A DNA stretch of 64,000 nt from Octopus vulgaris (lineage: Eukaryota): assembly GCA_951406725.2 (NCBI GenBank), contig OX597819.1, forward strand, positions 32,612,001-32,676,000. Reading direction: 5' to 3'. Positions 12,753-58,395 of the stretch are shown in pieces; positions within the stretch are counted from its first letter, which is position 1, and each line of letters starts with the position of its first letter. A model generated the notes under the pieces. That model saw only the letters and a program-made list of their open reading frames with translations. It searched no databases and was not told the origin of the DNA. The position numbers and the translations under genes are program-made.

Positions 12753-13211
12753 GTCTCCTTGTCTGTCTATTTATCTGTCTTTCTGTTTGTCTGTCTCTGT
12801 CTGTCTGTCTGTCTCTCTCTGTCTCTCTGTCTCTCTCTCTCTCTGTATATATGTGTGTATGTGTCTGATGTATATATATATATTTGTATGTACATGCCTT
12901 TTTATGAGTATAAATGACAGTGTATGTATTATGAATTTATGTATACGAGTGAATGTTTATATATATATATACACACACATATGTATATATGTATTTACAT
13001 ATATATATATTTGAGTAGTTGAATGAATTATCTTATTAAGGATAATTCGAAAGATAACCGATACCTGGGTAGCAAATTCACATCAGAAAGAACACGGTTG
13101 AAGCTACGTCCCTTGGGCATAGACTACGTGTCTTCGTGCGGAAATTTGTATGTTTATTTTAAAATTATAAGTATATGAAAGAATGGAGTTGAACGACTAG
13201 TTAACAAATAT

Positions 13212-13306
13212 CCTTTATTCTCGACATATGTTTCGAAGGCTGCATATTCCTAATTCCGAAGGAATAAGGAGTATATTATGCAGATTTCTCATCAGGAAAA
13301 TCAAGG
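13212..13306 (-). ncRNA. Type I hammerhead ribozyme (minus-strand copy)
   Basis: Reverse complement of the plus-strand HHR at 13374-13468; predicted cleavage between 13223 and 13222. Confidence 0.75.
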
Positions 13307-13373
13307 AACTTATGTCGACATTAAAATGCACAAAAAACATTTAGCTGACCGCTCTCATAAGTCGACATAAGTT

Positions 13374-13468
13374 CCTTGATTTTCCTGATGAGAAATCTGC
13401 ATAATGTACTCCTTATTCCTTCGGAATTAGGAATATGCAGCCTTCGAAACATATGTCGAGAATAAAGG
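13374..13468 (+). ncRNA. Type I hammerhead ribozyme with long stem II and minimal stem III
   Basis: CTGATGA 13385-13391; stem II G13392..C13445 (GAA/TTC, CTGCATA/TATGCAG); GAAAC-ATAT-GTC with cleavage after C13457; stem I CCTTGATTTTC pairs with GAGAATAAAGG (one G.U, one mismatch). Confidence 0.8.
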
Positions 13469-14446
13469 ATATTTGTTAACTAGTCGTTCAACTCCATTCT
13501 TTCATATATATATAATTTTAATATATATATATATATATATGTGTGTGGAAATCTGTGGGTATGTTTGTTTGTGGCGTTGTTATGTAACTCGTCCTACAAA
13601 GTTTTATCGATTTTAATGAAACTTAACACGTGAGTAGAACTTGTGTCTGGGAAATTAGTGGCATACTTAGATTGTTGAAAAAATTGATAATAGGGCCTCT
13701 GGAAAGGATTTTTTTATCTACTACATATAACTAATATATTGTTTTTAAACATCCAAGAGAAATAACACATTCGCTCCTGAAACGGATCCTTATATATAGC
13801 CAAGAGAAATAAACGATTCATATTCGTAAATTATTTCGTATAAATCAAATTGAGTATGCTTATTTGAGCTATTTTAGTTATTTTCGCAATTTATCCAGTA
13901 CAACGCTTAAACAAGTGAATAATATTTTCCTACACAATATATCCACTTATTTCGCTTAGTGCCTTATTCATGAATACACCAACACTAGCGCCGCTGAGGG
14001 TAATATTCTCTGCGAACGCATAAAAGCTTTTTTTCAGAGATTTTTACTTCGAATTGTTATTATCTCATATCTAATTAGCCTGATATTACGTAACATGCTT
14101 CATGATTTTAGTACACATACATTATTAGTATTTCCTCCTAAGTTTTATATTCTCTGGGAGCGTATTAAAGCCCTTTTCGGTGCTACTTTATTTGAATTCT
14201 TACTATCGGGTAATTAATTTCATGTTATTACATAACTGACTTCACAGTTTGGAAATATTGGAAATTCCTAAAAACAAGATCCCGTGTAAGACAGTGCGGT
14301 ATTCTCTGTAAATGCACAAAAACGTTTTAAAGGCTACATACTTTGTATCGTTGCTACTTGATTAGCAAAACAATTATGAGAACGGAACCAAGGGATATAT
14401 ATATATATATATATATACTCTTACATACATGAGCATATGGAGTATA

Positions 14447-15799: not shown

Positions 15800-16821
15800 T
15801 GTTGGACAAAATAATGGAAACACCTTAAAATTTCAAGCAAGGTTATTTTAATATGGGGCAGGACCATCTTTAGTAGTAATTACAGCTTGGATTCTATGAA
15901 GTATGGATTCGTACAAAGTTCTTGTAGTGGGGATGGTGGAGAATATCGACTCCTTACTTGATTTCTAAAATGCACTATAAGTGTTTAATAATATTGAGAT
16001 CTAGGGACTATGGTGGCCAGATAAGATGTTCAACTTCACTAGAATGTTCCTCGTGCCAGTCAGTAACAACTTTAGCTGTGTGAATTGCTGCATTATCATC
16101 CTGAAAGATTGCGCTTCCCTTCGGAAACAGTTTCGTAAACATAAGATGAATTTGATCAGATAAAATGCTTAAATAGTCTTGACTATTAATTCTGTCATGA
16201 AGGGAAACCAAACGAGCCTGCGGATTTCCGAGATATAGACTCCCAGATCATCACAGAACCTCCTCCATGTTTAACAGTTGAAAGAAGGCAGTCTTGGTCA
16301 AATGCTTCTTTTGGCAGTCTCCAGATGTATATTCGAACGGTGGGAGGAAATAAGGTAAATGATGACTCGTCCGAGAAAACGACATTCTTCCACTGCTCTA
16401 GGGACCAATTCTGTAGGTTTTTACTCCACTTTAAACGCGTTGCAACGTTTGTTTTTGAAACTAGTGGTTTTCTGATTGCAGCCCTCCCGTGAAATCCGGT
16501 TTGGTGCAGCTCCCGGAGAATAGTTTTTGTGGAAACTGAGTTCTCGAGGTGGTCATTAAGCCCTGCAGTAATTTTGGGAGCTGCACTTTTCTGATCCTTT
16601 CTAAGAACTCGCGTAAGTGTCCGACTGTCTCTATCTGAAACTTGATTTTCTTCCGGAGTTTTTTTTCGACGAGGAGGTTTTCCCTCTTTTTCAAAGGCTG
16701 TCATTACTTTCGAGGCATTACTTTTTGATACACCAAACATTTCGGCTGTTTTTGTTACGATAGCGCCTACAATAGGAGCAAAAACAATTTGACCTCTTTA
16801 AAAGTCCGATAGATCTGTCAT
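15796..16821 (-). pseudogene. Tc1-family transposon, decayed transposase, one TIR
   Basis: Motifs VVFSDES, TVKHGGGSVMIW, IFQDDNAAIH and WPP*SLDLNII; start MTDLSDF*RGQIV at 16821; TA|CAGATGTTGGACAAAATAATGGAAACACC terminus at 15796; the opposite TIR was not found. Confidence 0.92.
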
Positions 16822-23714: not shown

Positions 23715-23776
<62 letters not shown>

Positions 23777-23822
23777 GTATATTTATTAATTAATTGTTTT
23801 ATTGTTCTAGTTTATTTTTAAC

Positions 23823-23901
23823 CTGATGAGTGACTATATTTATATCGAAGTGATTTCTACTACTATAATCATTTCCTAAATATAGCCACGAAACACGTGT
23901 C
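23823..23901 (+). ncRNA. Hammerhead ribozyme core with 60-nt stem II and weak stem I
   Basis: CTGATGA 23823-23829; GTGACTATATTTA/TAAATATAGCCAC (12 of 13 pairs) plus inner GAAGTGATT/AATCATTTC; GAAAC-ACGT-GTC ending at 23901; stem I is only 3 bp after a C.U mismatch. Confidence 0.6.
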
Positions 23902-24060
23902 TTTATTTTACAAATTATATACGTTTTTATTATTATTTTTTTGCAATTTATTTAATCATTGACACTTTATTATTTTAATTTTAATATTTCCGTTATGTGT
24001 AATTTTCTAGATGGTGTAATTTAATTGTTCATTTTGAATTGATAAAATGTGTTTTTTTTC

Positions 24061-24148
<88 letters not shown>

Positions 24149-24639: not shown

Positions 24640-24698
<59 letters not shown>

Positions 24699-24754
24699 AA
24701 AAAATGAAGTTCGAAAATGCTGCTGTATTATACAATTTTTAATTTTTATATATA

Positions 24755-24800
24755 CATTATAACATGTTTCAGTTCCTGAAATGAACCTTATCAAAAAAAG
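24755..24800 (-). ncRNA. Minimal hammerhead-like motif, U3-A8 variant, at the PLE 3' end
   Basis: Minus strand UUGAUAA-GGUUC-AUUUCAG-GAACU-GAAACAUGUU; G10.1.U11.1 wobble; poor stem I. Confidence 0.4.
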
Positions 24801-25169
24801 TTATATATAAAAAAAGACAGCTCATGCCGTCAAACACAAGAAATTCATTTATAATACACAACGGAGTCAGACATCTTAGAGTTCATGTATAGTTGATATA
24901 TAGTTCATGTATAGTTGATATATAGTTTGAAGTATATGTTCAAAGTGTTCGATGCAGTGGCCCACGGTGGCGATACGTATTCAATACAAAAAACAGATCA
25001 AAGTGGTGGAAAGCGGTCAATACAGAAGATTGATGTTTCCGAAAGAGCGAGGAATTCATTTTTACTTTAAGCAATTGTGATGACCCATGGTGGAAGTTCG
25101 CTGGGTGGTTCTAGTGAGTTTTTGTGAAATGCTCGGTTTTATAATGCCTGTTAGGTGGTCAATCTAGCG

Positions 25170-25605
25170 TAGCGTGACGTCATCAATGTTTTGACCAATC
25201 GTTTCGTTAGGTGGCTTTAATCAAGTAGAACAGGACGTCATCATTATTTTGACCAATCGCTGCATTATAACTCCCTCTTGTTTGTTTCCTGTTTTGACCA
25301 GTCGCTTCGTTAGTCAAGTAGAACGGGACGTCATCATTATTTTGACCAATCGCTGCATTATATCTGCCTCTTGTTTGTTTCCTGTTTTGACCAGTCGCTT
25401 CGTTAGTCAAGCAGAGCGGGACGTCATCCAGATTCTGCCCAATCACGACTTATAGCTACATTAGATCTGCCCCCTGTCTGTACTTGTTAGGTGACTATTC
25501 AAGCAGAAAAGGACGTCATCAATATTCTGATTAATGACTGTCCCCTGTTTGTATCCTGTCCATTCTAGCAGAGCTAGACGTCATCAACTTGTTGACCAAT
25601 CAGAA
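25170..25605 (+). promoter_or_regulatory. Array of six GACGTCA-N12-CCAAT composite motifs in ~93-bp tandem repeats
   Basis: GACGTCA at 25176, 25234, 25327, 25420, 25512 and 25577, each followed after exactly 12 nt by CCAAT (TTAAT in the fifth). Regulatory function is inferred. Confidence 0.5.
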
Positions 25606-25754
25606 TCGGGTCTGACCCTTAGCTGTATCGTATGTATCAGGGTCAGATTTTTTCCTTTTTTACTAAGGCATATTTCCGTCAGAGTGAGTGTCTGTTTGAA
25701 GTAGCGGCCGTGGTGGAATTTTGCTTCTCCTTTTCGGAGGACTTATCTTTTGTT

Positions 25755-26921
25755 TTAGTATTCCTGGCCCAGGGTGTTTAAACTTGGTCTAAATTTTTTT
25801 ATGAAATATAGTTCTTTATTTTGGCGTTGTGTGAAGGTTGCGTTGTCACTGAATTTATAGACAGGGTTAGTTGTAAATTTCGGATTTACATTTCCAGCAC
25901 ATCTATCTATGTGTCCGCTGACCGGTATTTTGCGGTAATCAGGGTTTCTAATTTGTGATTTATGCACCGCCATCCTGTTACGTAAGCTATTTTTTGTATG
26001 GCCTATATACTGCCTATTGCAGCCTGCGCATGTTATGACGTAAATTAAGTTTTCTGATGCGCAGGTGAAGTTTGTTCTAATGGTGAACTGGTGGCCTTGT
26101 TCCAGTATAAATTCTGATCCTTCTTTCAAGATGACACAGATTCCGCAGTTGGGCCTTCCACATTTTCTAAATGCTGGTTTTGTGGTTGATGTTGAGTGCA
26201 GTGTAGCTTGGGTTAAAATCCTTTTCAAGGATTTTGGTTGCCGTTTACTTTTAATGATGGTGTGTGTTTCGAGGATCCGGTTCATCTTTGGGTCTCCCTT
26301 TAGTAGGGCTGTGCTTTGTAGTATGGTGTTGAAGGCCTCATTGTTGAGTGGGTTGTGTGTAGAGATGTAGGGAAGGGTTTTTAATTGTTCTTTCTTTTTT
26401 GGTTTTGTTTGTCTCAGGTCTTCTCTACTTAATTTAAGTACCCGTTGGATTGTACTGTCTATTAGGGGCTGTGGATAGTTTCTATTTGTGAGTGTGGTTC
26501 TAAGTTCCTGGAGACGTGTGTGTCGGGTGTTTGTGTCTGATATTATGGTGCAAATCCTTCTAGCTAAACAAAAAGGGACATTCATTCTAGTGTGTCGTGG
26601 GTGGCATGAATCAAAGGGTAGGTACTGTTTAGAGTCTGTCGGTTTATAGTAGATATCTGTCTCTATTTTGTTGCCGGTTTTCTTAATAAGGATGTCTAAA
26701 AATGGTAATTCTTTTTCGTTGTGGTCCATCGTGAATTGTATATTGTCATTTATTCCATTTAATAGAATTTTAAATTCCTCAAGTTTCTCTATGCCTTTGT
26801 CCCAGATGATGAAACAGTCATCGAGGTATCTTTTCCAGTTGTTATGGATATAGGTGGCGAAGGTGTTTCCATATTTCTCGAGTGTCATCCGGTATAGTAT
26901 TTTCTCGAGGTATCCCATCAC
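25755..26921 (-). CDS. Penelope-like element polyprotein, C-terminal RT plus GIY-YIG endonuclease (5'-truncated)
   Basis: 388 codons without a stop; LVMGYLE, WKRYLDDCF, LPFLDI, YYKPTDS.QYL, PRHTRMNVPF; CGRPNCGIC zinc motif; NLIYVITCAGCNRQYIGHT...LRNRMAVH GIY-YIG. Confidence 0.95.
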   Translation of the reverse strand: MMGYLEKILYRMTLEKYGNTFATYIHNNWKRYLDDCFIIWDKGIEKLEEFKILLNGINDNIQFTMDHNEKELPFLDILIKKTGNKIETDIYYKPTDSKQYLPFDSCHPRHTRMNVPFCLARRICTIISDTNTRHTRLQELRTTLTNRNYPQPLIDSTIQRVLKLSREDLRQTKPKKKEQLKTLPYISTHNPLNNEAFNTILQSTALLKGDPKMNRILETHTIIKSKRQPKSLKRILTQATLHSTSTTKPAFRKCGRPNCGICVILKEGSEFILEQGHQFTIRTNFTCASENLIYVITCAGCNRQYIGHTKNSLRNRMAVHKSQIRNPDYRKIPVSGHIDRCAGNVNPKFTTNPVYKFSDNATFTQRQNKELYFIKKFRPSLNTLGQEY

Positions 26922-26949
26922 TAGGTATTTATATATATATATATATAAA

Positions 26950-28990: not shown

Positions 28991-29290
28991 GGCGCGTGGC
29001 TTTGTGGTATGCGGATCACGATCGTAAGGTCACGAGTTTGATTCCTGGCGGCGCGTTGTGTCCTTGAGCAAGACACTTTATTTCACGTTGCTGCAGTCCA
29101 CTCAGCTGGCAAAAATGAGTAGTAACTGTATTTCAAAGGGCCAGCCTCGTCACAGTCTGTATCAAGCTGAATCTCCCTGAGATCTACGTTAAGGGTACGC
29201 GCGTCGGTGGAGTGTTCAGCCACTTGCACGTTAATTTTTTCAGAGATGGCTGTACCGTGGGTCGGATCAACTCGTAACCAACGGAGTGCC
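28991..29290 (+). mobile_element. tRNA-derived SINE sharing the family C 3' tail
   Basis: Head GGCGCGTGGCTTTGTGG...GAGTTTGATTCC; tail TGTATTTCAAAGGGCCAGCC...CGTTAAGGGTAC...CGTAACCAACGGAGTGC as in 5861-6243. Confidence 0.8.
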
Positions 29291-30147
29291 AGTTTTATGA
29301 CCACTGAGCTATTCATCAGAAGAAAATCCAAGGTGGATCTATTATCACGTTACCTTCGTTTCAAAGGCGGTTATCGTAGAAGTTAATCGATGCATTTACT
29401 TATGATTGTCCACCACCTCTGAAATTTATCATGATGGCTAATATGTACCTGGCATACTTTTCAGATGCAAAACTTATTATTGTGAGACACTGAAATATTT
29501 TCCTTGCGCAAGTACTAATACAACACATTATTTTTGAGTATTTCTATGTCACTACTAAATTTAGTTTTGAAATTAGATCACAATAACACATTTAATCGTT
29601 TGTTTTTATTATTAAAACTGATTTCAATGAAATTACAAATATGGACATTTCTCAAATGTTTTATGCGTAGTCTTAAATTCTTAAGTGTTATCTCAAAGTC
29701 TATTTCTTGTTTGCATCTATCCTGGATTCTTGCAACAATATCATATTGTGGATTTCTTTTTCTAACAGTTTTTGAAAATCTTGTGGGGACTTCATTCCAC
29801 CAACTCCCTTCTACGAGCAAAGTTTCGCAGCTTTTTGTTTGTGGTGGGGCATGATTAAAATCTATGGTGGACAATATATTATTGTATGCGTTGTAGCTTC
29901 TTTGGTATTGTGACGAGGTCAAACATAATTCCTCCTGAAACTGCTCTTCCCCTTCAAACACAAGCATGTGTTATTCTATAGTTGCTGCTATCACTGTTGT
30001 ATTACTGTCGTCGCTTTCGTTTTCTGATGTTAATTTTGTTATTGTTATTTAAACATAAGTCTGTCCTCATTGAACAATCCTGTGAGCAAAAACATTCTAG
30101 TCGTAACTATCCCAATATTTACTTAGGCAGTGTTCATTTATTCAATA

Positions 30148-30845: not shown

Positions 30846-31473
30846 CGTTGGATACAATGTTTCATGTTATTTGTGCCAACGCTCGGTTTTCTAGTTTCGA
30901 AAATCGCCGAGGTCAACTTGACCAGTCATTCGTTCAAGATCGATAAAAAAAAGCACCAATATAGGACAATGAACTATGGGAAATGTGGGAACGTCCAACG
31001 ACATGCTACATAATATTTGTTCCAGCTCAGTAGATTCTGAGTTCAAATACCACCCATAGCCTATATGGGGCACACAATCCATTGCTAGTTTAACACCTTC
31101 ACTTGGAAACTTGGGTACCTTTAGCAGAATCTATACATTTTCCAACGTAAGAGACTGTCTCCAATTTGAGGATACCGCTATACTTTCCCACTCTCCACTC
31201 CCGAGGACTGCCAAATGTCAGGAACCCTGCCTTTATCTTGAATAAAACGAGGAAAAAATAATACCGGAAGTGTATACAGTAATCAATAATGTTATAATAG
31301 ATGTGGTTCGGAGGAATTCATGGGAGAGAAGACGAAAAATAGAAAAATATTTGTTTAAATCTTAAGGAGAAATGGTCCTGAGTAAGTGGCTGATGATCAG
31401 TTGCTTGGATTTCCTACAATGCGAAGATCCGCAGACAAGATCGACCGGGTGATAGTCAGTTTCACCTAAGTAC

Positions 31474-31652
31474 AGGCTCATGCGTGGCTGTTGGGTAAGA
31501 AGCTTGATTCTCAACCATGTGGTTCCACATTCAGTCACGCTGCGTGGCACTTTGAGCATGTCTTCCGTTGCCCCGGGCCGGCCAAAGCTTAGTGAGTGGA
31601 TTTGGCTGACGGAAACTGAAAGAAGTCCGTCGTATAGACACACACACACACA

Positions 31653-31729
<77 letters not shown>

Positions 31730-31855
31730 TTTTATGTGTGTGTCTTTGTATCTGTGTTTGTCCCAACACTGCTTGACAAATGGTGTTAGCTTCATTAGGT
31801 CCCGTTAATCAGCGGTTCAGCAAAAGTGAACGACAGAATACGTAGCAGGTCTTAT
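31474..31855 (+). mobile_element. SINE family B with internal (CA)n
   Basis: GTGGCTGTTGGGTAAGAAGCTTG head and GGAAACTGAAAGAAGTCCGTCG body. Confidence 0.8.
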
Positions 31856-33550: not shown

Positions 33551-34809
33551 CTACTATATATATATATATAGAGAGAGAGAGAGACAGACAGACAGATATA
33601 TATATTTATTCACACGTATTCACACACAAAAACAAACAAAAATCCACATAAGGCTATACACATAATCTACTATCAAAGTAAATACAATCTATGTGCGTTT
33701 TTATCCCTAGACGTATATAATGGGATTAGTTTATCAAATGAGAAATGCCAAGTGTTGTGTCACAAGTCTGACAGGAAGAATACAATTGTTGCTTTGAATT
33801 TGATGTGTTCAGATTGAAGTGTCGATTCTGATGTGAGATACTGGATCTATCGGATTATATACATCAAGTTTGATGTTATCAGTCTGTTCCATACTGGAAG
33901 ATGTAGTTGTAAAGGCGGGAAGCGTTTTACAGTGTGTTCTATAGACACAGATGGAGAAACATATGTATTCTTGGCGGTGAGAAGGCTTTCAGTCTGTTCC
34001 ATGTAGACAGATGTAGTTGTACAGGTGAGAAATCTTTCAGTTTGTTCTCTACTGGCAGATGCAGCTTTTGAGTGTGAACTGTTTTAAAATTTCTTCGCAA
34101 CACCTCGTTTAAATATGTTTAAAATGTAATCAATGCTAAAAATAATATTCCTGTAAACTTAAATTAATGAGTTCTTGTCTTTTTTTTTTTTTTTGTATCT
34201 GTTTCAGTTCTTTGATTGCGGTTAAGCTGGGGCACAGCTATGAAGGGTTTCAGTCAGACAAATCGAACCCAGAACTTTTTTCAAGCCTGGTACTTATTCT
34301 ACCGGACTTTTGCCGAACCACTATGTTATGGGGACGCAAGCACACCAACACCGGTTGTTAAGCACTTTTAATAAAAAGCTACAAAATTATCACAAGACTG
34401 CTACTCGGAATTACCAATTCCTGTTTGTCGGACAACGTGAAACTTAGAGAAACAGTTTTCTGATGATAAATGCATATTATTATTCTTTCGATATTCGCGT
34501 ACCATTCTTTTCACCTTGCTTTGAAATTATAAGCTCACCCCTGTGTGTATGTGTTTTTGCACGCGCGCAAATATATATTTATTCACACGTATACATGTGA
34601 TCTCTTGAGCACCACCAGTTCAAATATTTTTTCCTCTGTCTTCCCTTCTTGGGATCTTTCCTTCTCCTTGTTTCCGACGAAGAGCTCCGCTCGAAACGTT
34701 AGGCCCTCCTTCCCTTCATTCCTGAGCGTCAATAATACTTTAATTGTTCCACGTCCTGCGTTGCTGTGTTTTTTTCTCTCTTTTTTTCTGTGTTTTCTTG
34801 TTTGGGTTA

Positions 34810-34865
<56 letters not shown>

Positions 34866-35121
34866 TTTAACAATTAAGGATAATCTCTTAATAAGGGATC
34901 TTAACAAGAAATTATCGGGTAGCTAGCGTGAAAACCTCATAAAAGAAAAGAATCCGAAAATAATTTTTTCTTTTGAACAAATTAATTATATCTATATTGT
35001 ATAGAGGGCATTATTACACATAAATGCCTCACACTAGGAGGGACAAAGTCATTACTACCAAAATTATACTAATCATACCCAAATGCAGTTTTTCAAAGCA
35101 AGACATTTAAAAAATGAATTT

Positions 35122-35179
35122 AGTTCTGTATCACCGTGATTTCACATTCAACTTACGTCTAATGATCGTCAGCAGAACT
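35122..35179 (-). ncRNA. Type I hammerhead ribozyme, unit 1
   Basis: Minus strand AGTTCTG-CTGACGA-TCATTAGAC GTAA GTTGAATGT-GAAA-TCA CGG TGA-TA-CAGAACT; 7-bp stem I; cleavage between 35129 and 35128. Confidence 0.8.
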
Positions 35180-35600
35180 GATTCTGAACACATCATAAAT
35201 AAACTACCAACCTTACGTAGCGAAGACGAACAGACAACTGCTCACTCCGGCCAAGCACATGGAATGTTTATAAATCATATATCCGGTAAATGGCGGGCTT
35301 TTTACGAACTGCATGTCGGGTAATGAAAAGTATTTCGGAATAAGTTTAACATTAAGGATAATCTCTTAATAAGGGATCTTAACAAGAAATTATCGGGTAG
35401 CTAACGTGAAAACCTCATAAAAGAAAAGAATCCGAAAATAATTTTTTTCTTTTGAACAAATTAATTATATCTATATTGTATAGAGGGCATTATTACACAT
35501 AAATGCCTCACACTAGGAGGGACAAAGTCATTACTACCAAAATTATACTAATCATACCCAAATGCAGTTTTTCAAAGCAAGACATTTAAAAAATGAATTT

Positions 35601-35658
35601 AGTTCTGTATCACCGTGATTTCACATTCAACTTACGTCTAATGATCGTCAGCAGAACT
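35601..35658 (-). ncRNA. Type I hammerhead ribozyme, unit 2
   Basis: Identical to unit 1, 479 bp downstream. Confidence 0.8.
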
Positions 35659-36079
35659 GATTCTGAACACATCATAAATAAACTACCAACCTTACGTAGC
35701 GAAGACGAACAGACAACTGCTCACTCCGGCCAAGCACATGGAATGTTTATAAATCATATATCCGGTAAATGGCGGGCTTTTTACGAACTGCATGTCGGGT
35801 AATGAAAAGTATTTCGGAATAAGTTTAACAATTAAGGATAATCTCTTAATAAGGGATCTTAACAAGAAATTATCGGGTAGCTAGCGTGAAAACCTCATAA
35901 AAGAAAAGAATCCGAAAATAATTTTTTTCCTTTGAACAAATTAATTATATCTATATTGTATAGAGGGCATTATTACACATAAATGCCTCACACTAGAGGG
36001 ACAAAGTCATTACTACCAAAATTATACTAATCATACCCAAATGCAGTTTTTCAAAGCAAGACATTTAAAAAATGAATTT

Positions 36080-36137
36080 AGTTCAGTATCACCGTGATTT
36101 CACATTCAACTTACGTCTAATGATCGTCAGCAGAACT
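36080..36137 (-). ncRNA. Type I hammerhead ribozyme, unit 3 (stem I mismatch)
   Basis: T>A at 36085 creates a U.U mismatch at stem I pair 1.2. Confidence 0.7.
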
Positions 36138-36559
36138 GATTCTGAACACATCATAAATAAACTACCAACCTTACGTAGCGAAGACGAACAGACAACTACT
36201 CACTCCGGCCAAGCACATGGAATGTTTATAAATCATATATCCGGTAAATGGCGGGCTTTTTACGAACTGCATGTCGGGTAATGAAAAGTATTTCGGAATA
36301 AGTTTAACAATTAAGGATAATCTCTTAATAAGGGATCTTAACAAGAAATTATCGGGTAGCTAACGTGAAAACCTCATAAAAGAAAAGAATCCGAAAATAA
36401 TTTTTTTCTTTTGAACAAATTAATTATATCTATATTGTATAGAGGGCATTATTACACATAAATGCCTCACACTAGGAGGGACAAAGTCATTACTACCAAA
36501 ATTATACTAATCATACCCAAATGCAGTTTTTCAAAGCAAGACATTTAAAAAATGAATTT

Positions 36560-36612
36560 AGTTCTGTATCACCGTGATTTCACATTCAACTTACGTCTAA
36601 TAATCGTCAGCA
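36560..36612 (-). ncRNA. Truncated hammerhead, unit 4, cut by the inversion junction
   Basis: Core intact, but only 2 nt of the 5' strand of stem I remain; G>A at 36602. Confidence 0.6.
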
Positions 36613-37061
36613 TTTTTAAATGTCTTGCTTTGAAAAACTGCATTTGGGTATGATTAGTATAATTTTGAAAAACTGCATTTGGGTATGATTAGTATAATTT
36701 TGGTAGTAATGACTTTGTCCCTCCTAGTGTGAGGCATTTATGTGTAATAATGCCCTCTATACAATATAGATATAATTAATTTGTTCAAAGGAAAAAAATT
36801 ATTTTCGGATTCTTTTCTTTTATGAGGTTTTCACGCTAGCTACCCGATAATTTCTTGTTAAGATCCCTTATTAAGAGATTATCCTTAATTGTTAAACTTA
36901 TTCCGAAATACTTTTCATTACCCGACATGCAGTTCGTAAAAAGCCCGCCATTTACCGGATATATGATTTATAAACATTCCATGTGCTTGGCCGGAGTGAG
37001 CAGTTGTCTGTTCGTCTTCGCTACGTAAGGTTGGTAGTTTATTTATGATGTGTTCAGAATC

Positions 37062-37119
37062 AGTTCTGCTGACGATCATTAGACGTAAGTTGAATGTGAA
37101 ATCACGGTGATACAGAACT
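37062..37119 (+). ncRNA. Type I hammerhead ribozyme in the inverted block
   Basis: CTGACGA 37069-37075, GAAA 37098-37101, AUA triplet with cleavage after 37112; stem I extends by GAAT/ATTC (37057-37060 with 37122-37125) after a 1x2 loop. Confidence 0.8.
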
Positions 37120-37240
37120 AAATTCATTTTTTAAATGTCTTGCTTTGAAAAACTGCATTTGGGTATGATTAGTATAATTTTGGTAGTAATGACTTTGTCC
37201 CTCCTAGTGTGAGGCATTTATGTGTAATAATGCCCTCTAT

Positions 37241-37333
<93 letters not shown>

Positions 37334-37352
37334 TATACATATAAATAAATAA

Positions 37353-37388
<36 letters not shown>

Positions 37389-37704
37389 ATATATGTATAT
37401 GTATATATATGTATATATATATTTATATGTATATATATATATATTTATATATATACATATATATATTTATACACACACACACACACACACATACACACAT
37501 ATATATATAGTGGTCGTATACCGTCAACTCAATGTGACAGTCCCGTAAGGGAATTACACCACCGCCATTTAGCCCTCGGAAACATCGACGTCTCCTGTCG
37601 GCTTTGACACATATTCTGTGTTCTTATATTTGCAAAGGGGAGGCAATCACCCCCGCAAGCCGGGACTAAGCACCTGAAGACATATGTTTCTGAGTATATC
37701 TATA

Positions 37705-37850
37705 TACAACGGGCTTGTTTCTGTCTACCAAATCCACTCACAAGGCTTTGGTCGGCCCGAGGCTATAGAAGAAGACACATGCCCAAGATGCCAGGCGGTG
37801 GTATTGAACCCGGAACCATGTGGTCAGAAAGCAAGCTTCCTACCAGACAG
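37705..37850 (-). mobile_element. SINE family B, head half
   Basis: CTACCAAATCCACTCACAAGGCTTTGGTCGGCCCGAGGCTATAG...GAACCCGGAACCATGTGG. Confidence 0.85.
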
Positions 37851-38261
37851 ACAGCCTCTTTTTTTCTTTCGTATTATGAAAATATATGGAATTTTGTATT
37901 AGTAGTTTGATTCTAGGAGAAAGTCTGTGGGTGTTGTTTTTTGTTCTAGTTTACCAAATAAGTTAGCATTGATCAAATAGACGTAATTGATCAAATAGAC
38001 GTTCTAGTTGTGGCCATGTCATCTTTATTTCAGACGTAGCGTATGTACTATATGATTAAACACGATGTGATTATATTTGAAGAATTTTTTTCTGTCTACT
38101 GTGTTTTCATAGCAAGTGGAGCGACGGCGTAGAAGCCTCTCATTAGAACAGAATTTTAACTTGCCTGTTAAGGCAGGGTGTTTTCTTCATCTTCACAATG
38201 ATTTAAGCTGCCAACTGATGCGTGGTAGACGTTCCATGAATGACTACTACTACTACTGACG

Positions 38262-38649
38262 GATGGAAGCACTCCGTCGGTTACGACGACGAGGGTTCCG
38301 GTTGATCCGATCAACGGAAAAGCCTGCTCGTGTAATTAACGTGTAATTGGCTGAGCACTCCACAGACACGTGTACCCTTAACGTAGTTCTCGGGGATATT
38401 CAGCGTGACACAGAGAGTGACAAGGCCGGCCCTTTGAAATACAGGTACAACAGAAACAGGAAGAAAGAGTGAGAGAAAGTTGTGGTGAAAGAGTACAGCA
38501 GGGATCACCACAACCTTTCTCTGCCGGAGCCTCGTGGAGCTTTTAAGTGTTTTCCCTCAATAAACACTCACAACGCCCGGTCTGGGAATCGAAACAGCGA
38601 TCCTATGACCGCGAGTCCGCTGCCCTAACCACTGGGCCATTGCGCCTCC
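38262..38649 (-). mobile_element. SINE family C, full length, with a long flanking duplication
   Basis: Near-perfect reverse complement of 5861-6243; 28-bp exact repeat at 38214-38241 and 38650-38677. Confidence 0.92.
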
Positions 38650-38678
38650 ACTGATGCGTGGTAGACGTTCCATGAATA

Positions 38679-38747
<69 letters not shown>

Positions 38748-38760
38748 GCTACTGCTACTG

Positions 38761-38838
<78 letters not shown>

Positions 38839-38905
38839 GTGGTAGTGGTAGTAGTAGCATATAGTAGTAGTAGAGTTGCGCGTTTTTTATTTTATTAAAA
38901 TTAGA

Positions 38906-39065
38906 GGCGCAGGCGTGACTATGTGGTAAGAGGCTTGTTTTCCAGCCACATGTTTCCGGGTTCAGTCCCACTGCGTGACAACTTGGGCAAGTGTCTTCTA
39001 CTATAGATTCGGGCTGATCCAAGCTTAGTAAGTGAGTTTGGCAGGCAGAAACTGAAAGAAGCCCG

Positions 39066-39107
<42 letters not shown>

Positions 39108-39335
39108 ATATATACCTGTGTGTGTTTATGCTTGTGTTTACCCACTACCGTTGCTTGACAACCGGTGTTGGTACGTTTACTTCCCCGTAACTTAACGGTT
39201 CAGCAAAAGTGACCTATGCCATAAGTACCAGATTTTAAAATAAGTAAGCACTGGGGTCGATACATTCGACTAAAAGAAAATGCTTCGAGGCAGTGCCCCA
39301 GCATGGCCGCAGTCAAATGACTGAAACAAGTAAAA
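38906..39335 (+). mobile_element. SINE family B, full
   Basis: GGCGCAGGCGTGACTATGTGGTAAG head to GGCCGCAGTCAAATGACTGAAACAAGTAAAA tail. Confidence 0.88.
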
Positions 39336-48068: not shown

Positions 48069-48905
48069 CACACACATATATATATATATACATACGTACA
48101 TATACAAATACATATATGGACAAATATATATATATATATATATAGATAGATAGATAGATAGACAGATAGATAGATAGACAGCTAAAAATATAAATATACA
48201 TACATATATGTGTATATGTGTATGTTACGTGTGTTTGTGTATGTGTGTGCGTGCATAAATGATGTAAAGAGAGAAAAAAACAAGCGTGAGAACGGAGACG
48301 GAGAATCTGATTATAAGGTAACTGCATAAAAGGGTTAAATCGAAATGGATCGATTCATCAATAAGTATTTACCCTAGAAAATACTGTTGTGGATTTTAGT
48401 TCGGCTACAAATCACTGTACATACATACGTACACACATACTTAAATACACACACATGCACGCACGTACGCACACACACATACACACACACACAAACATAC
48501 ACATACACACATACACACACATACACACACACACACCGCAAATACACAGACAGACATTACATAGGTATGTCTTTTAACCGAAATGTTCTGCTTTTCTACA
48601 CAAGCGAAACGTCCCGCGTTCTTCCTGTGTCCCTGTTGATGTGTGAGCATGCGCACGCGCGTGTATGTATATACATACACATATAAATACAAATACACAT
48701 GTACGTATGCATGCATGCATGTATGTATGTATGTATGTATATATATACACACACACGCGCTCATGCTTACACACACACACACTCATATTTTTACATAAGC
48801 TGTTGTTTATAGCTTTATGTGTTTCGATATGTTACCTTTCCTCGAGTGTTTATAAAATTCGTATGTCAGTAATATATGATACATACCTACATCCATACAT
48901 ACATG

Positions 48906-48975
<70 letters not shown>

Positions 48976-48980
<5 letters not shown>

Positions 48981-49147
48981 AGCTTGCTTCCCAACCGCAT
49001 GGTTTCGGGTTCAATCCTACTGCGTGACACCTTGGGCAAGTATCTTCTACTATAGCCTCGCACCGACCAAAGCCTTGTAAGTGGATATGGTAGATGGAAA
49101 CTGAACGAAGTTCGTCGTATATATATATATATATATAAATGCGTGTT

Positions 49148-49187
<40 letters not shown>

Positions 49188-49345
49188 TGTATCTGTGTGT
49201 CTGTGTCTGTGTTTGTCTCCTCCATGGCTGCTTGACAACCGGTGTTGGTGTGTTTGCGTCCCCGTAACATAGCTGTTCAACCAAGGAAACCGATAGAGTA
49301 AGTACCAGGCTTGAAAAGAAAATAAGACTGGGCCGGAGTCTAATG
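48976..49345 (+). mobile_element. SINE family B, head slightly truncated
   Basis: AAGAAGCTTGCTTCCCAACCGCATGGTTTCGGGTTCAATCC...CTGAAACAAGTAAAAG. Confidence 0.85.

Positions 49346-57616: not shown

Positions 57617-58395
<779 letters not shown>

What the first reader, a model, noticed from the sequence alone, without database searches (positions are those of the whole stretch)
34863..37244. Retrozyme-like array: 479-nt units each carrying a type I hammerhead, predicting a circular RNA
Every unit has, on the minus strand, a 7-bp stem I (plus 4 bp beyond a 1x2 loop), CUGACGA, a stem II with a GUAA tetraloop (7 of 9 pairs), GAAA, a 4-bp stem III and an AUA cleavage triplet. Cleavage at successive sites would release exact 479-nt monomers (for example 35607 to 35129) with ends suited to ligation into circles, as established for retrozymes. 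Head-to-tail near-identical units fit reverse transcription around a circular template. Unusual points: the unit is longer than the few-hundred-nt metazoan retrozymes I recall, there is a non-canonical U10.1.U11.1 pair, and the near-palindromic stem III (AUCACGGUGAU) could allow dimeric cleavage between units. No credible protein is encoded.
Basis: partly seen in the sequence, partly recalled or inferred. Interest (0 to 1): 0.9.

Follow-up and report, generated by a model that had tools for sequence, protein, structure and literature searches.

The report
Octopus hammerhead retrozyme array, head-to-head
This is a short array of 479-bp non-coding repeats, each carrying a hammerhead self-cleaving RNA motif, in what is probably an octopus genome: an ordinary member of the known animal "retrozyme" class, whose two-armed inverted layout inside a (TA)n microsatellite looks like an insertion made by a Penelope-like retrotransposon.

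Summary
The repeat and the motif are real. There are 479-bp units, 98-100% alike, at 34861-37255. Each has a complete hammerhead core (CUGACGA, GAAA, A15.1-U16.1, A17) framed by three helices open at helix I (type I).

- 34861-36612 holds 3.7 units with the ribozyme on the minus strand.
- 36613-37255 holds 1.3 units inverted, with the ribozyme on the plus strand.
- The 5'-truncated ends meet at 36612/36613, and both 3' ends abut (TA)n.

Only four hammerheads are complete. One of them has a helix I mismatch, and the copy at the junction lacks helix I. Only two exact 479-nt monomers could be released.

Rfam Hammerhead_1 scores 14.5 bits against a threshold of 34. My own descriptor expects 0.017 chance hits per 64 kb.

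The same window holds a 5'-truncated Penelope-like element (91% identical to an Octopus vulgaris protein) and three more Penelope-type hammerheads, nearly all bounded by (TA)n.

Verdict: a new member of the non-LTR retrozyme class, probably inserted by Penelope-like machinery. Variants shared between units argue against copying of a single monomeric circle. Self-cleavage, circles and expression are untested, and I found no other copy.

The parts
34814..34863 (.). Left flank: (TA)25 microsatellite abutting the 3' end of the left arm
   Evidence: The junction reads ...AAACTTAT|ATATAT on the minus strand, a TAT microhomology.
34861..36612 (-). Left arm, ribozyme sense on the minus strand. Units: m0 36612-36567 (unit positions 434-479 only), m1 36566-36087, m2 36086-35608, m3 35607-35129, m4 35128-34861 (unit positions 1-268).
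   Evidence: TRF period 479, 3.7 copies, 98%. BLAST of the monomer against the window. Unit alignment.
35122..35179 (-). Complete type I hammerhead; predicted cleavage between 35129 and 35128
   Evidence: Strict descriptor hit. Hand-built fold -11.8 kcal/mol against an MFE of -13.2.
35601..35658 (-). Complete type I hammerhead; predicted cleavage between 35608 and 35607
   Evidence: Strict descriptor hit.
36080..36137 (-). Hammerhead with an intact core but a U.U mismatch at helix I pair 1.2-2.2 (unit position 2, A to U); predicted cleavage between 36087 and 36086
   Evidence: Missed by the strict descriptor for this reason.
36560..36612 (-). 5'-truncated hammerhead at the head-to-head junction. 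The core and helices II and III are present, but the 5' strand of helix I is lost. Carries C10.2 to U, which keeps a G.U pair.
36613..37255 (+). Right arm, inverted, ribozyme sense on the plus strand: unit positions 16-70, then 32-479 (36664-37112), then 1-142 (37113-37255)
   Evidence: Inverted repeats of 540 nt at 99% and 521 nt at 100%. BLAST. 0 mismatches and 1 homopolymer gap against the m2+m3 register of the left arm.
36629..36702 (+). 35-bp tandem duplication (2.1 copies, 100%) at the 5' end of the right arm, next to the junction; unexplained
   Evidence: family D5.
37062..37119 (+). Complete type I hammerhead of the inverted arm; predicted cleavage between 37112 and 37113
   Evidence: Strict descriptor hit.
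37245..37471 (.). Right flank: imperfect (AT)n microsatellite abutting the 3' end of the right arm
   Evidence: The junction reads ...CTCTATACAA|ATATAT.

Best explanation
The locus is one insertion of a non-autonomous, non-LTR retrozyme, a 479-nt family, in a cephalopod genome that is probably an octopus.

How the element would work (inferred from the family):
- Multimeric transcripts fold a type I hammerhead at each unit boundary.
- Helix III is too weak to stand alone. Two neighbouring ribozymes pair their near-palindromic AUCACGGUGAU segments into a double hammerhead and cleave after ...GGUGAUA.
- The 479-nt monomers carry a 5'-OH and a 2',3'-cyclic phosphate. A host RtcB-type ligase can close them into highly base-paired circles.

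How this copy arose (inferred from the layout):
- A Penelope-like element's RT/GIY-YIG enzyme cut an AT-rich (TA)n microsatellite on both strands.
- Both 3'-OH ends primed cDNA synthesis on retrozyme RNA at short TA microhomologies.
- The two cDNAs grew towards each other and were joined at their 5'-truncated ends. This gives two head-to-head arms whose 3' ends face the microsatellite.
- The template was more probably a multimeric (or at least dimeric) RNA than a single monomeric circle.

Shown here: the array, the motif, the two-arm geometry, the microsatellite flanks, the nearby Penelope-like elements and the fold statistics. Inferred: catalysis, circle formation, transcription and the integration pathway.
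For: Array and motif. Chance expectation is 0.017 strict-descriptor hits per shuffled 64 kb, roughly 1e-4 for one 479-nt unit on both strands.

One polarity only: no ribozyme family of any kind matches either strand at E <= 10.

Retrozyme-like properties:
- 33.6% G+C.
- The circular fold is -119.6 kcal/mol, z = -5.7 against 200 dinucleotide shuffles, 66% paired. The complement gives only z = -3.3.
- No coding capacity.

Dimer mode: the helix III hairpin is worth 0 to -0.2 kcal/mol, against -11.9 for the inter-ribozyme duplex. An unconstrained cofold of two 76-nt domains gives the extended helix III at -37.7, against 2 x -13.2 for two monomers.

Precedents from papers:
- Animal retrozymes are tandem 150-450-bp, low-GC, type I hammerhead repeats that co-exist with PLEs (PMC7229834).
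- Consensus lengths run 51-972 bp and the units are related to PLE pLTRs (bioRxiv 10.64898/2026.07.22.740005).
- Axolotl HHR_Amex2 has a U.U at the base of helix II and cleaves better as a dimer.

Penelope-like signature:
- PLE insertions are partial tandems with an adjacent inverted 5'-truncated copy, and favour microsatellites (PMC8557442).
- A purified PLE enzyme cuts and extends both strands at AT-rich DNA (PMC11167929).
- Here both arms read outward from 36612/36613 and end in (TA)n. P is about 1.6e-4 for both ends lying within 3 bp of a (TA)n>=8 edge.
- The window also holds a 5'-truncated PLE with a GIY-YIG domain. It is 91% identical to an Octopus vulgaris protein and bounded by (TA)n on both sides.
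- Three further PLE-type hammerheads are present, two of them in the same head-to-head geometry.
Against: - Rfam Hammerhead_1 scores 14.5 bits, far below its 34-bit threshold. Rfam also misses the textbook-looking PLE-type hammerheads at 13.3 kb, so this is weak counter-evidence.
- U10.1.U11.1 replaces the usual G-C pair, and the MFE of the isolated domain is not the active fold.
- I retrieved no second locus, no diverged copy and no transcript. So there is no covariation evidence and no evidence of expression or mobility.
- Within the array, 2 of the 8 variant positions fall in the hammerhead, so no purifying selection is detectable.
- The unit shows no sequence similarity to the PLE copy or to the other hammerhead elements in the window.
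- The two arms end at different unit positions (268 and 142), unlike the fixed RT start sites of the one PLE studied in vitro.
- My descriptor was written after I had seen the motif.
Confidence: 0.68

Rival explanations
1. The array is an inert satellite or tandem repeat. Its hammerhead-like motif is either decayed or never active, so it makes no ribozyme-processed RNA and no circles, and grew by unequal crossing-over.
For: Sub-threshold Rfam score. A non-canonical U.U at 10.1-11.1 and a marginal helix III. No other copies or transcripts found. No depletion of variants in the motif.
Against: All 13 invariant core positions are present with three correctly placed helices, at a chance rate of about 1e-4 per unit. 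The same U.U variant and weak helix III occur in experimentally active axolotl retrozymes. The strand-specific excess of structure (z = -5.7 against -3.3) and the Penelope-type insertion geometry are not expected of a plain satellite.
Confidence: 0.12
2. The element is a retrozyme, but the inverted right arm is not an insertion footprint. It arose later by a DNA-level inverted duplication (fold-back or template switch) of the m2-m3 segment, or it is an assembly artefact of a chimeric long read.
For: The right arm is identical (0 mismatches, 1 homopolymer gap over 581 nt) to the m2+m3 register of the left arm. All three indels between units lie in homopolymer runs, as expected of long-read error. 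Craig et al. note that such tandem/inverted PLE structures cause assembly problems.
Against: The junction is not a perfect palindrome. The arms are offset: one starts at unit position 434, the other at 16, with a 128-nt spacer and a 35-bp duplication. The right arm ends in its own (AT)n at a unit position (142) where the left-arm copy continues. A second hammerhead element at 13144-13536 has the same head-to-head geometry, and that geometry is a described hallmark of Penelope-like insertions.
Confidence: 0.25
3. One reading: the tandem units were made by rolling-circle reverse transcription around a single monomeric 479-nt circular RNA.
For: Units are head-to-tail and 98-100% identical. This is the model proposed for animal retrozymes (PMC7229834 discussion; abstract).
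Against: One circle should give identical units. Instead position 204 alternates T, C, T, C in m1-m4, and position 158 is G in m2 and in the right arm only. The right arm matches one particular pair of neighbouring units exactly. This fits copying of a heterogeneous multimer (or a dimeric circle plus one later change), or later conversion. In vitro, unprocessed multimeric RNA was the dominant PLE substrate. Only five substitutions carry this argument, so it is weak.
Confidence: 0.2
4. The repeat is not a separate non-autonomous family. It is a run of solo pLTRs (untranslated terminal repeats) of an autonomous Penelope-like element whose ORF is absent at this locus.
For: PLE pLTRs carry type I hammerheads and form partial tandems. 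In Xenopus, retrozymes and pLTRs are sister sequences.
Against: The unit has no similarity to the PLE copy in the window or to its 3' region. The O. vulgaris PLE locus L002 lacks the motif. This hammerhead (CUGACGA, U.U, GUAA loop, A17) differs from the three PLE-type hammerheads in the window (CUGAUGA, G10.1-C11.1, palindromic hexamer, C17). I could not search all PLE families of the genome.
Confidence: 0.1

Closest known systems
Metazoan non-LTR retrozymes (Cervera & de la Pena 2020, PMC7229834), e.g. the Mytilus galloprovincialis 350-390-bp repeats and axolotl Rtz353 with HHR_Amex2
   Same: Tandem non-coding repeats of a few hundred bp with low G+C. One type I hammerhead per unit in one polarity. 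A highly self-paired predicted circle. Co-existence with Penelope-like elements. A U.U at the base of helix II and reliance on a dimeric ribozyme, as in HHR_Amex2. The host is a mollusc, as is the mussel.
   Different: The unit sequence has no detectable relative. Helix II is long (9 positions, GNRA loop) and helix I is 7 bp plus an extension, rather than the canonical 6/4 bp with loop-loop contacts. The array is short (about 5 units) and two-armed. Expression and circularity were shown for the mussel, coral and axolotl elements and are untested here.
Hammerheads of Penelope-like elements and their pLTRs (Cervera & de la Pena 2014, PMC4209133; Craig et al. 2021, PMC8557442)
   Same: Type I topology, a long helix II, a weak palindromic helix III implying dimeric action, partial tandems with an adjacent inverted 5'-truncated copy, and insertion into microsatellites or AT-rich DNA.
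   Different: No RT/EN ORF between the repeats. 10.1-11.1 is U.U, not the conserved G-C preceded by a bulged base. Helix III has 4 bp. There is no sequence similarity to the PLE copy or the PLE-type hammerheads in the same window.
Newt satellite 2 and other classical hammerhead satellites (Schistosoma Sm-alpha, cave-cricket pDo500)
   Same: A tandem genomic repeat transcribed into self-cleaving monomers, with a double-hammerhead requirement caused by a weak helix III (Forster et al. 1988, as cited).
   Different: These are now subsumed under retrozymes. They have huge copy numbers and match Rfam Hammerhead_1, which this motif does not.
Plant LTR retrozymes and viroid-like circular RNAs
   Same: Hammerhead-bounded monomers that circularise into compact RNAs.
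   Different: Plant retrozymes have type III hammerheads inside LTRs, plus a PBS and PPT. Viroid-like RNAs replicate RNA-to-RNA and often carry ribozymes in both polarities. Here there is one polarity, type I, no LTR, and the element is DNA-encoded.

Membership tests
Hammerhead ribozyme, type I | Conserved core: C3 U4 G5 A6 N7 G8 A9, G12 A13 A14, A15.1-U16.1, H17 not G | tested here: met
   The sequence reads CUGACGA ... GAAA ... A15.1/U16.1 ... A17 in all five copies, with no core substitution.
Hammerhead ribozyme, type I | Three helices around the core, with helix I open and helices II and III closed by loops | tested here: met
   Helix I has 7+4 bp, formed by sequence before the core and after the cleavage site. 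Helix II has 7 of 9 pairs and a GUAA loop. Helix III has 4 bp and a CGG loop.
Hammerhead ribozyme, type I | Match to the curated covariance model (Rfam RF00163) at its gathering score | tested here: not met
   14.5 bits against 34, E = 0.5 in 101 nt. The model also fails on the PLE-type hammerheads at 13.3 kb, so it is insensitive to this class.
Hammerhead ribozyme, type I | Canonical G10.1-C11.1 pair at the base of helix II | tested here: not met
   It is U.U here. The same deviation exists in the active axolotl HHR_Amex2.
Hammerhead ribozyme, type I | Compensatory changes that maintain the helices across relatives | tested here: inconclusive
   Only near-identical copies are available. One C-to-U change keeps a G.U pair and one A-to-U change breaks a helix I pair. 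No outside relatives were found.
Hammerhead ribozyme, type I | Site-specific self-cleavage | not testable with these tools
   Needs in vitro transcription of monomer and dimer constructs.
Metazoan non-LTR retrozyme | Head-to-tail repeats of about 50-1000 bp, each with a type I hammerhead | tested here: met
   479-bp period and one hammerhead per unit boundary. The published range is 150-450 bp or 51-972 bp.
Metazoan non-LTR retrozyme | No LTR, PBS, PPT or coding capacity; low G+C | tested here: met
   Pure tandem units, ORFs of at most 69 aa without homologues, and 33.6% G+C.
Metazoan non-LTR retrozyme | The monomer is predicted to form a stable, highly self-paired circle | tested here: met
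   -119.6 kcal/mol, z = -5.7, 66% paired.
Metazoan non-LTR retrozyme | Co-occurrence with autonomous Penelope-like elements | tested here: met
   A 5'-truncated PLE (RT C-terminal half plus GIY-YIG) at 25755-26921 and PLE-type hammerheads at 13.3 and 23.8 kb. I did not look for an intact autonomous copy.
Metazoan non-LTR retrozyme | Multiple dispersed insertions in the genome (mobility) | not testable with these tools
   No host genome is searchable at the DNA level. There is only one locus in the window.
Metazoan non-LTR retrozyme | Expression as linear and circular RNA of unit length | not testable with these tools
   Needs RNA-seq back-junction reads, northern blot or RNase R treatment.
Penelope-like-element-type insertion | Partial tandem plus an adjacent inverted 5'-truncated copy, in microsatellite or AT-rich target DNA | tested here: met
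   Head-to-head arms meet at 36612/36613 and both 3' ends lie in (TA)n. The hallmark is described in PMC8557442.
Penelope-like-element-type insertion | A 30-40-bp 'tail' at an outer end, or a fixed internal RT start site | tested here: not met
   The arms end at unit positions 268 and 142. The 35-bp duplication lies at the inner junction, not at an outer end.

The most novel reading that the evidence does not exclude
This locus may be a natural footprint of how animal retrozymes are mobilised. On this reading, a Penelope-like RT/GIY-YIG enzyme primed from both strands of a cut (TA)n microsatellite. It copied linear multimeric retrozyme RNA, not a monomeric circle, and so preserved the donor array's unit order in both arms. 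The locus would also be the first retrozyme family characterised in a cephalopod, with an active hammerhead that tolerates U10.1.U11.1 and a 9-position helix II.
Probability: 0.3. Interest if true: 0.55.

Novelty: new member of a known kind. Interest (0 to 1): 0.35.

Why it matters
Animal retrozymes are a recognised but thinly sampled source of abundant ribozyme-made circular RNAs. How they are copied back into DNA is still an open question. The published proposals are target-primed rolling-circle copying of circles, and mobilisation by Penelope-like elements.

If the layout at this locus recurs genome-wide, it would be sequence-level support for Penelope-like mobilisation and for a multimeric template. 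That layout is: head-to-head arms, 3' ends in a (TA)n microsatellite, and unit variants kept in register between the arms.

On its own the locus adds one more host lineage (cephalopods) and one more hammerhead variant to a known class. That is useful for annotation and for improving the covariance models, which miss it. It is not surprising to a specialist.

Tried and rejected
- Rfam at gathering score on the whole window: nothing. At E <= 10 on 34000-38000: only AT-repeat 'miRNA' noise and no ribozyme.
- Search for relatives of the hammerhead with the pattern CTGACGA-N16-30-GAAATCACGGTGATA(C). Viral contigs gave 0 hits. Metagenome contigs gave 1 hit (L001), which has no helix I and no repeat and is about what chance predicts. 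I rejected it.
- Exact look-ups of the 69-aa and 57-aa ORFs in public assemblies: none. Homology searches with both ORFs: none. This route was meant to catch transcriptome or genome contigs of the same repeat.
- The Octopus vulgaris locus L002, which encodes the closest PLE protein: no array, no matching hammerhead, no tandem repeat. I could not BLAST it against the window because the locus file never appeared in the script sandbox.
- tRNA scan for a SINE-like origin: none.
- My hand-written dimer structure could not be scored because it is pseudoknotted in cofold notation. I used the unconstrained cofold instead.
- The MFE of the isolated 68-nt domain is no better than shuffles (z = -0.25). 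Thermodynamics alone therefore does not single out the ribozyme fold.
- I first guessed a penaeid shrimp from the microsatellite load. I dropped that after the 91% match to an Octopus vulgaris protein.
Full report
**1. What is there**

Tandem Repeats Finder reports a 479-bp period at 34861-36612, with 3.7 copies and 98% matches. I took the minus-strand stretch 35607 to 35129 as the monomer. It is exactly 479 nt. BLAST against the window gave the following.

On the minus strand:
- 36612-36567, unit positions 434-479 only (m0)
- 36566-36087 (m1)
- 36086-35608 (m2)
- 35607-35129 (m3)
- 35128-34861, unit positions 1-268 (m4)

On the plus strand:
- 36613-36667, unit positions 16-70
- 36664-37112, unit positions 32-479
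- 37113-37255, unit positions 1-142

The repeat finder confirms inverted arms of 540 nt (99%) and 521 nt (100%). No other copy exists in the 64-kb window. A 35-bp tandem duplication (36629-36702) lies just inside the right arm.

**2. The hammerhead**

The minus strand reads AGUUCUG-CUGACGA-UCAUUAGAC-GUAA-GUUGAAUGU-GAAA-UCAC-GG-UGAU-A|CAGAACU.
- Every invariant core position is present: C3 U4 G5 A6 C7 G8 A9, G12 A13 A14, A15.1-U16.1 and A17.
- Helix I has 7 bp, extended by 4 bp past a 1x2 loop.
- Helix II has 7 pairs in 9 positions under a GNRA loop, with U.U at 10.1-11.1.
- Helix III has 4 bp with a 3-nt loop.
- Helix I is the open helix, so the topology is type I.

My descriptor, under strict settings, hits only the array (minus 35179-35122, minus 35658-35601, plus 37062-37119). 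It expects 0.017 hits per block-shuffled 64-kb window. The caveat is that I wrote the descriptor after seeing the motif.

Two copies are impaired:
- The m1/m2 copy has an A-to-U change at unit position 2 that breaks pair 1.2-2.2.
- The junction copy m0 has lost the 5' strand of helix I.

Only m2 and m3 are therefore bounded by complete ribozymes.

Rfam does not report the motif at gathering score. Hammerhead_1 reaches 14.5 bits against 34. Rfam also fails on the more canonical Penelope-type hammerheads at 13.3 kb, so I treat this as a limit of the model and not as refutation. No other ribozyme family matches either strand.

**3. Properties of the RNA**

- The unit is 33.6% G+C.
- As a circle the hammerhead polarity folds to -119.6 kcal/mol. 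That is z = -5.7 against 200 dinucleotide shuffles, with 66% of bases paired. The complement gives only z = -3.3.
- Helix III alone is worth 0 to -0.2 kcal/mol. Two AUCACGGUGAU segments pair at -11.9 kcal/mol.
- An unconstrained cofold of two 76-nt ribozyme domains adopts the extended inter-ribozyme helix III at -37.7 kcal/mol, against 2 x -13.2 for separate monomers.

This is the double-hammerhead arrangement described for newt, axolotl and Penelope-type ribozymes. It predicts cleavage in multimers and stability of the monomeric circle.

The longest ORFs (69 and 57 aa) have no homologue.

**4. Context and host**

ORF 25755-26921 (minus) carries the RT YLDD region and a GIY-YIG domain. It aligns to residues of about 296-677 of full-length Penelope-like proteins, so it is a 5'-truncated copy. 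It is 91% identical to an Octopus vulgaris protein, with weaker hits in Argonauta and bivalves. The window is therefore cephalopod, probably octopus.

Three more type I hammerheads of the Penelope kind are present. They share CUGAUGA, G10.1-C11.1, a long helix II, GAAA, a palindromic hexamer and C17.
- An inverted, outward-reading pair lies at 13216-13302 and 13378-13464, inside a 176-nt inverted repeat.
- A single one lies at 23823-23915.

Microsatellite flanks:
- The array, the PLE copy (about 24695-26929) and the 23.8-kb fragment are each bounded on both sides by (TA)n tracts.
- The 13.3-kb pair is bounded on one side only.
- A random point lies within 3 bp of a (TA)n>=8 edge with P = 0.0125, so both ends do so with P of about 1.6e-4.

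**5. How the locus probably arose**

Penelope-like insertions are described as partial tandems, often with an inverted 5'-truncated copy adjacent at the 5' end, and with a bias for microsatellites that hides target-site duplications (PMC8557442). A purified Penelope-like enzyme cuts AT-rich DNA and extends both strands (PMC11167929).

If both 3'-OH ends of a double cut prime on retrozyme RNA, the expected product matches what is seen:
- On the left, the element's sense strand is the minus strand and its 3' end faces the left flank.
- On the right, the sense strand is the plus strand and its 3' end faces the right flank.
- The 5'-truncated ends meet in the middle.
- The outer junctions show short TA microhomologies...CTTAT|ATAT on the left and ...TACAA|ATAT on the right, where the unit itself continues TATAGATATAA.

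This pathway is an inference. Against it, the two arms end at different unit positions (268 and 142), and the 35-bp duplication is not at an outer end.

**6. Circle or multimer as the template?**

The units differ at eight positions:
- Position 204 reads T, C, T, C in m1-m4.
- Position 158 is G only in m2 and in the right arm.
- The right arm matches the m2+m3 register with 0 mismatches and 1 homopolymer gap over 581 nt. It has 4 mismatches against the m1+m2 register and 2 against m3+m4.

Copying one monomeric circle should give identical units. The observed pattern fits two cDNAs copied from the same heterogeneous multimer, or a dimeric circle plus one later change, or a later DNA-level inverted duplication or gene conversion. 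Only five substitutions carry this argument, so it is suggestive only. All three indels lie in homopolymer runs and may be sequencing error.

**7. Comparison with what is known**

The locus meets every genomic criterion of metazoan non-LTR retrozymes that I could test: tandem type I hammerhead units, no LTR/PBS/PPT, no coding capacity, low G+C, a self-paired circle, and co-existence with Penelope-like elements.

- Consensus lengths of 51-972 bp are reported.
- A U.U at the base of helix II characterises axolotl HHR_Amex2. That ribozyme cleaves 22% in one hour as a monomer and much better as a dimer.
- Palindromic weak helix III with dimeric action is the norm.

I found no paper describing retrozymes in cephalopods. 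The nearest is a count of 235 Hammerhead_1 hits in the giant squid genome.

**8. Limits**

I could not retrieve any other copy or transcript from viral contigs, metagenome contigs, protein look-ups or the one O. vulgaris locus. Catalysis, expression, circularity, copy number and conservation are therefore all untested.

**9. Verdict**

This is a new member of a known kind. Interest is moderate to low. The head-to-head, microsatellite-embedded layout is the one aspect worth following genome-wide.

Noticed in passing
window 13144-13536: A 176-nt inverted repeat (95%, 41-nt spacer). Each arm carries a Penelope-type type I hammerhead reading outward (minus 13302-13216, plus 13378-13464): CUGAUGA, G10.1-C11.1, a helix II of about 50 nt, GAAA, palindromic CAUAUG, C17. 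This is the same head-to-head geometry as the 479-bp array, and the right end runs into (TA)n. Rfam does not call these hammerheads.
   Followed up: partly
window 23773-24064 (hammerhead at 23823-23915, plus strand): A third Penelope-type hammerhead (CUGAUGA ... GAAACACGUGUC, short helix I) in a fragment of about 290 bp lying exactly between two (TA)n tracts (23724-23772 and 24065-24109).
   Followed up: partly
window about 24695-26929, minus strand (ORF 25755-26921): A 5'-truncated Penelope-like element with the C-terminal half of the RT and a GIY-YIG endonuclease, 91% identical to an Octopus vulgaris protein. Both ends abut (TA)n (24643-24694 and 26930-26947). Its 3' UTR holds a decayed hammerhead-like stretch and a 93-bp tandem repeat (25217-25428). 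Its 3' end ...TTTTTTACAA(AT)n resembles the right-arm end of the array.
   Followed up: partly
window 36629-36702: A perfect 35-bp tandem duplication (2.1 copies) at the inner (5') end of the inverted arm, next to the head-to-head junction. Its origin is unexplained. It may be slippage or a template switch when the two arms were joined.
   Followed up: partly
window 16195-16740, minus strand: A Tc1/mariner-type transposase fragment (Pfam HTH_Tnp_Tc3_2, E = 8e-14).
   Followed up: no
window 31362-31769, 38603-39145, 48850-49284, 57645-58157: Spurious ORFs across these regions share peptide motifs (…DGLLSVS…IH… and …CHAVGLNPE.CGW…) next to microsatellites. This suggests a dispersed short repeat (SINE-like) associated with simple-sequence tracts. 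I did not examine it further.
   Followed up: no
window, whole: Very high microsatellite load: 58 pure (TA)n>=8 tracts covering 3.4% of the window, plus long (AC)n, (AG)n, (TCTA)n, (ACT)n, (TAA)n and (TCA)n arrays. A 55-bp tandem repeat lies at 912-1156.
   Followed up: no
window about 29240-29320, minus strand: A tRNA-like stretch (…AUAGCUCAGUGGU…GGUUACGAGUUGAUCC…) after a chance CUGAUGA. ARAGORN calls no tRNA, so it may be a tRNA-derived SINE remnant.
   Followed up: partly
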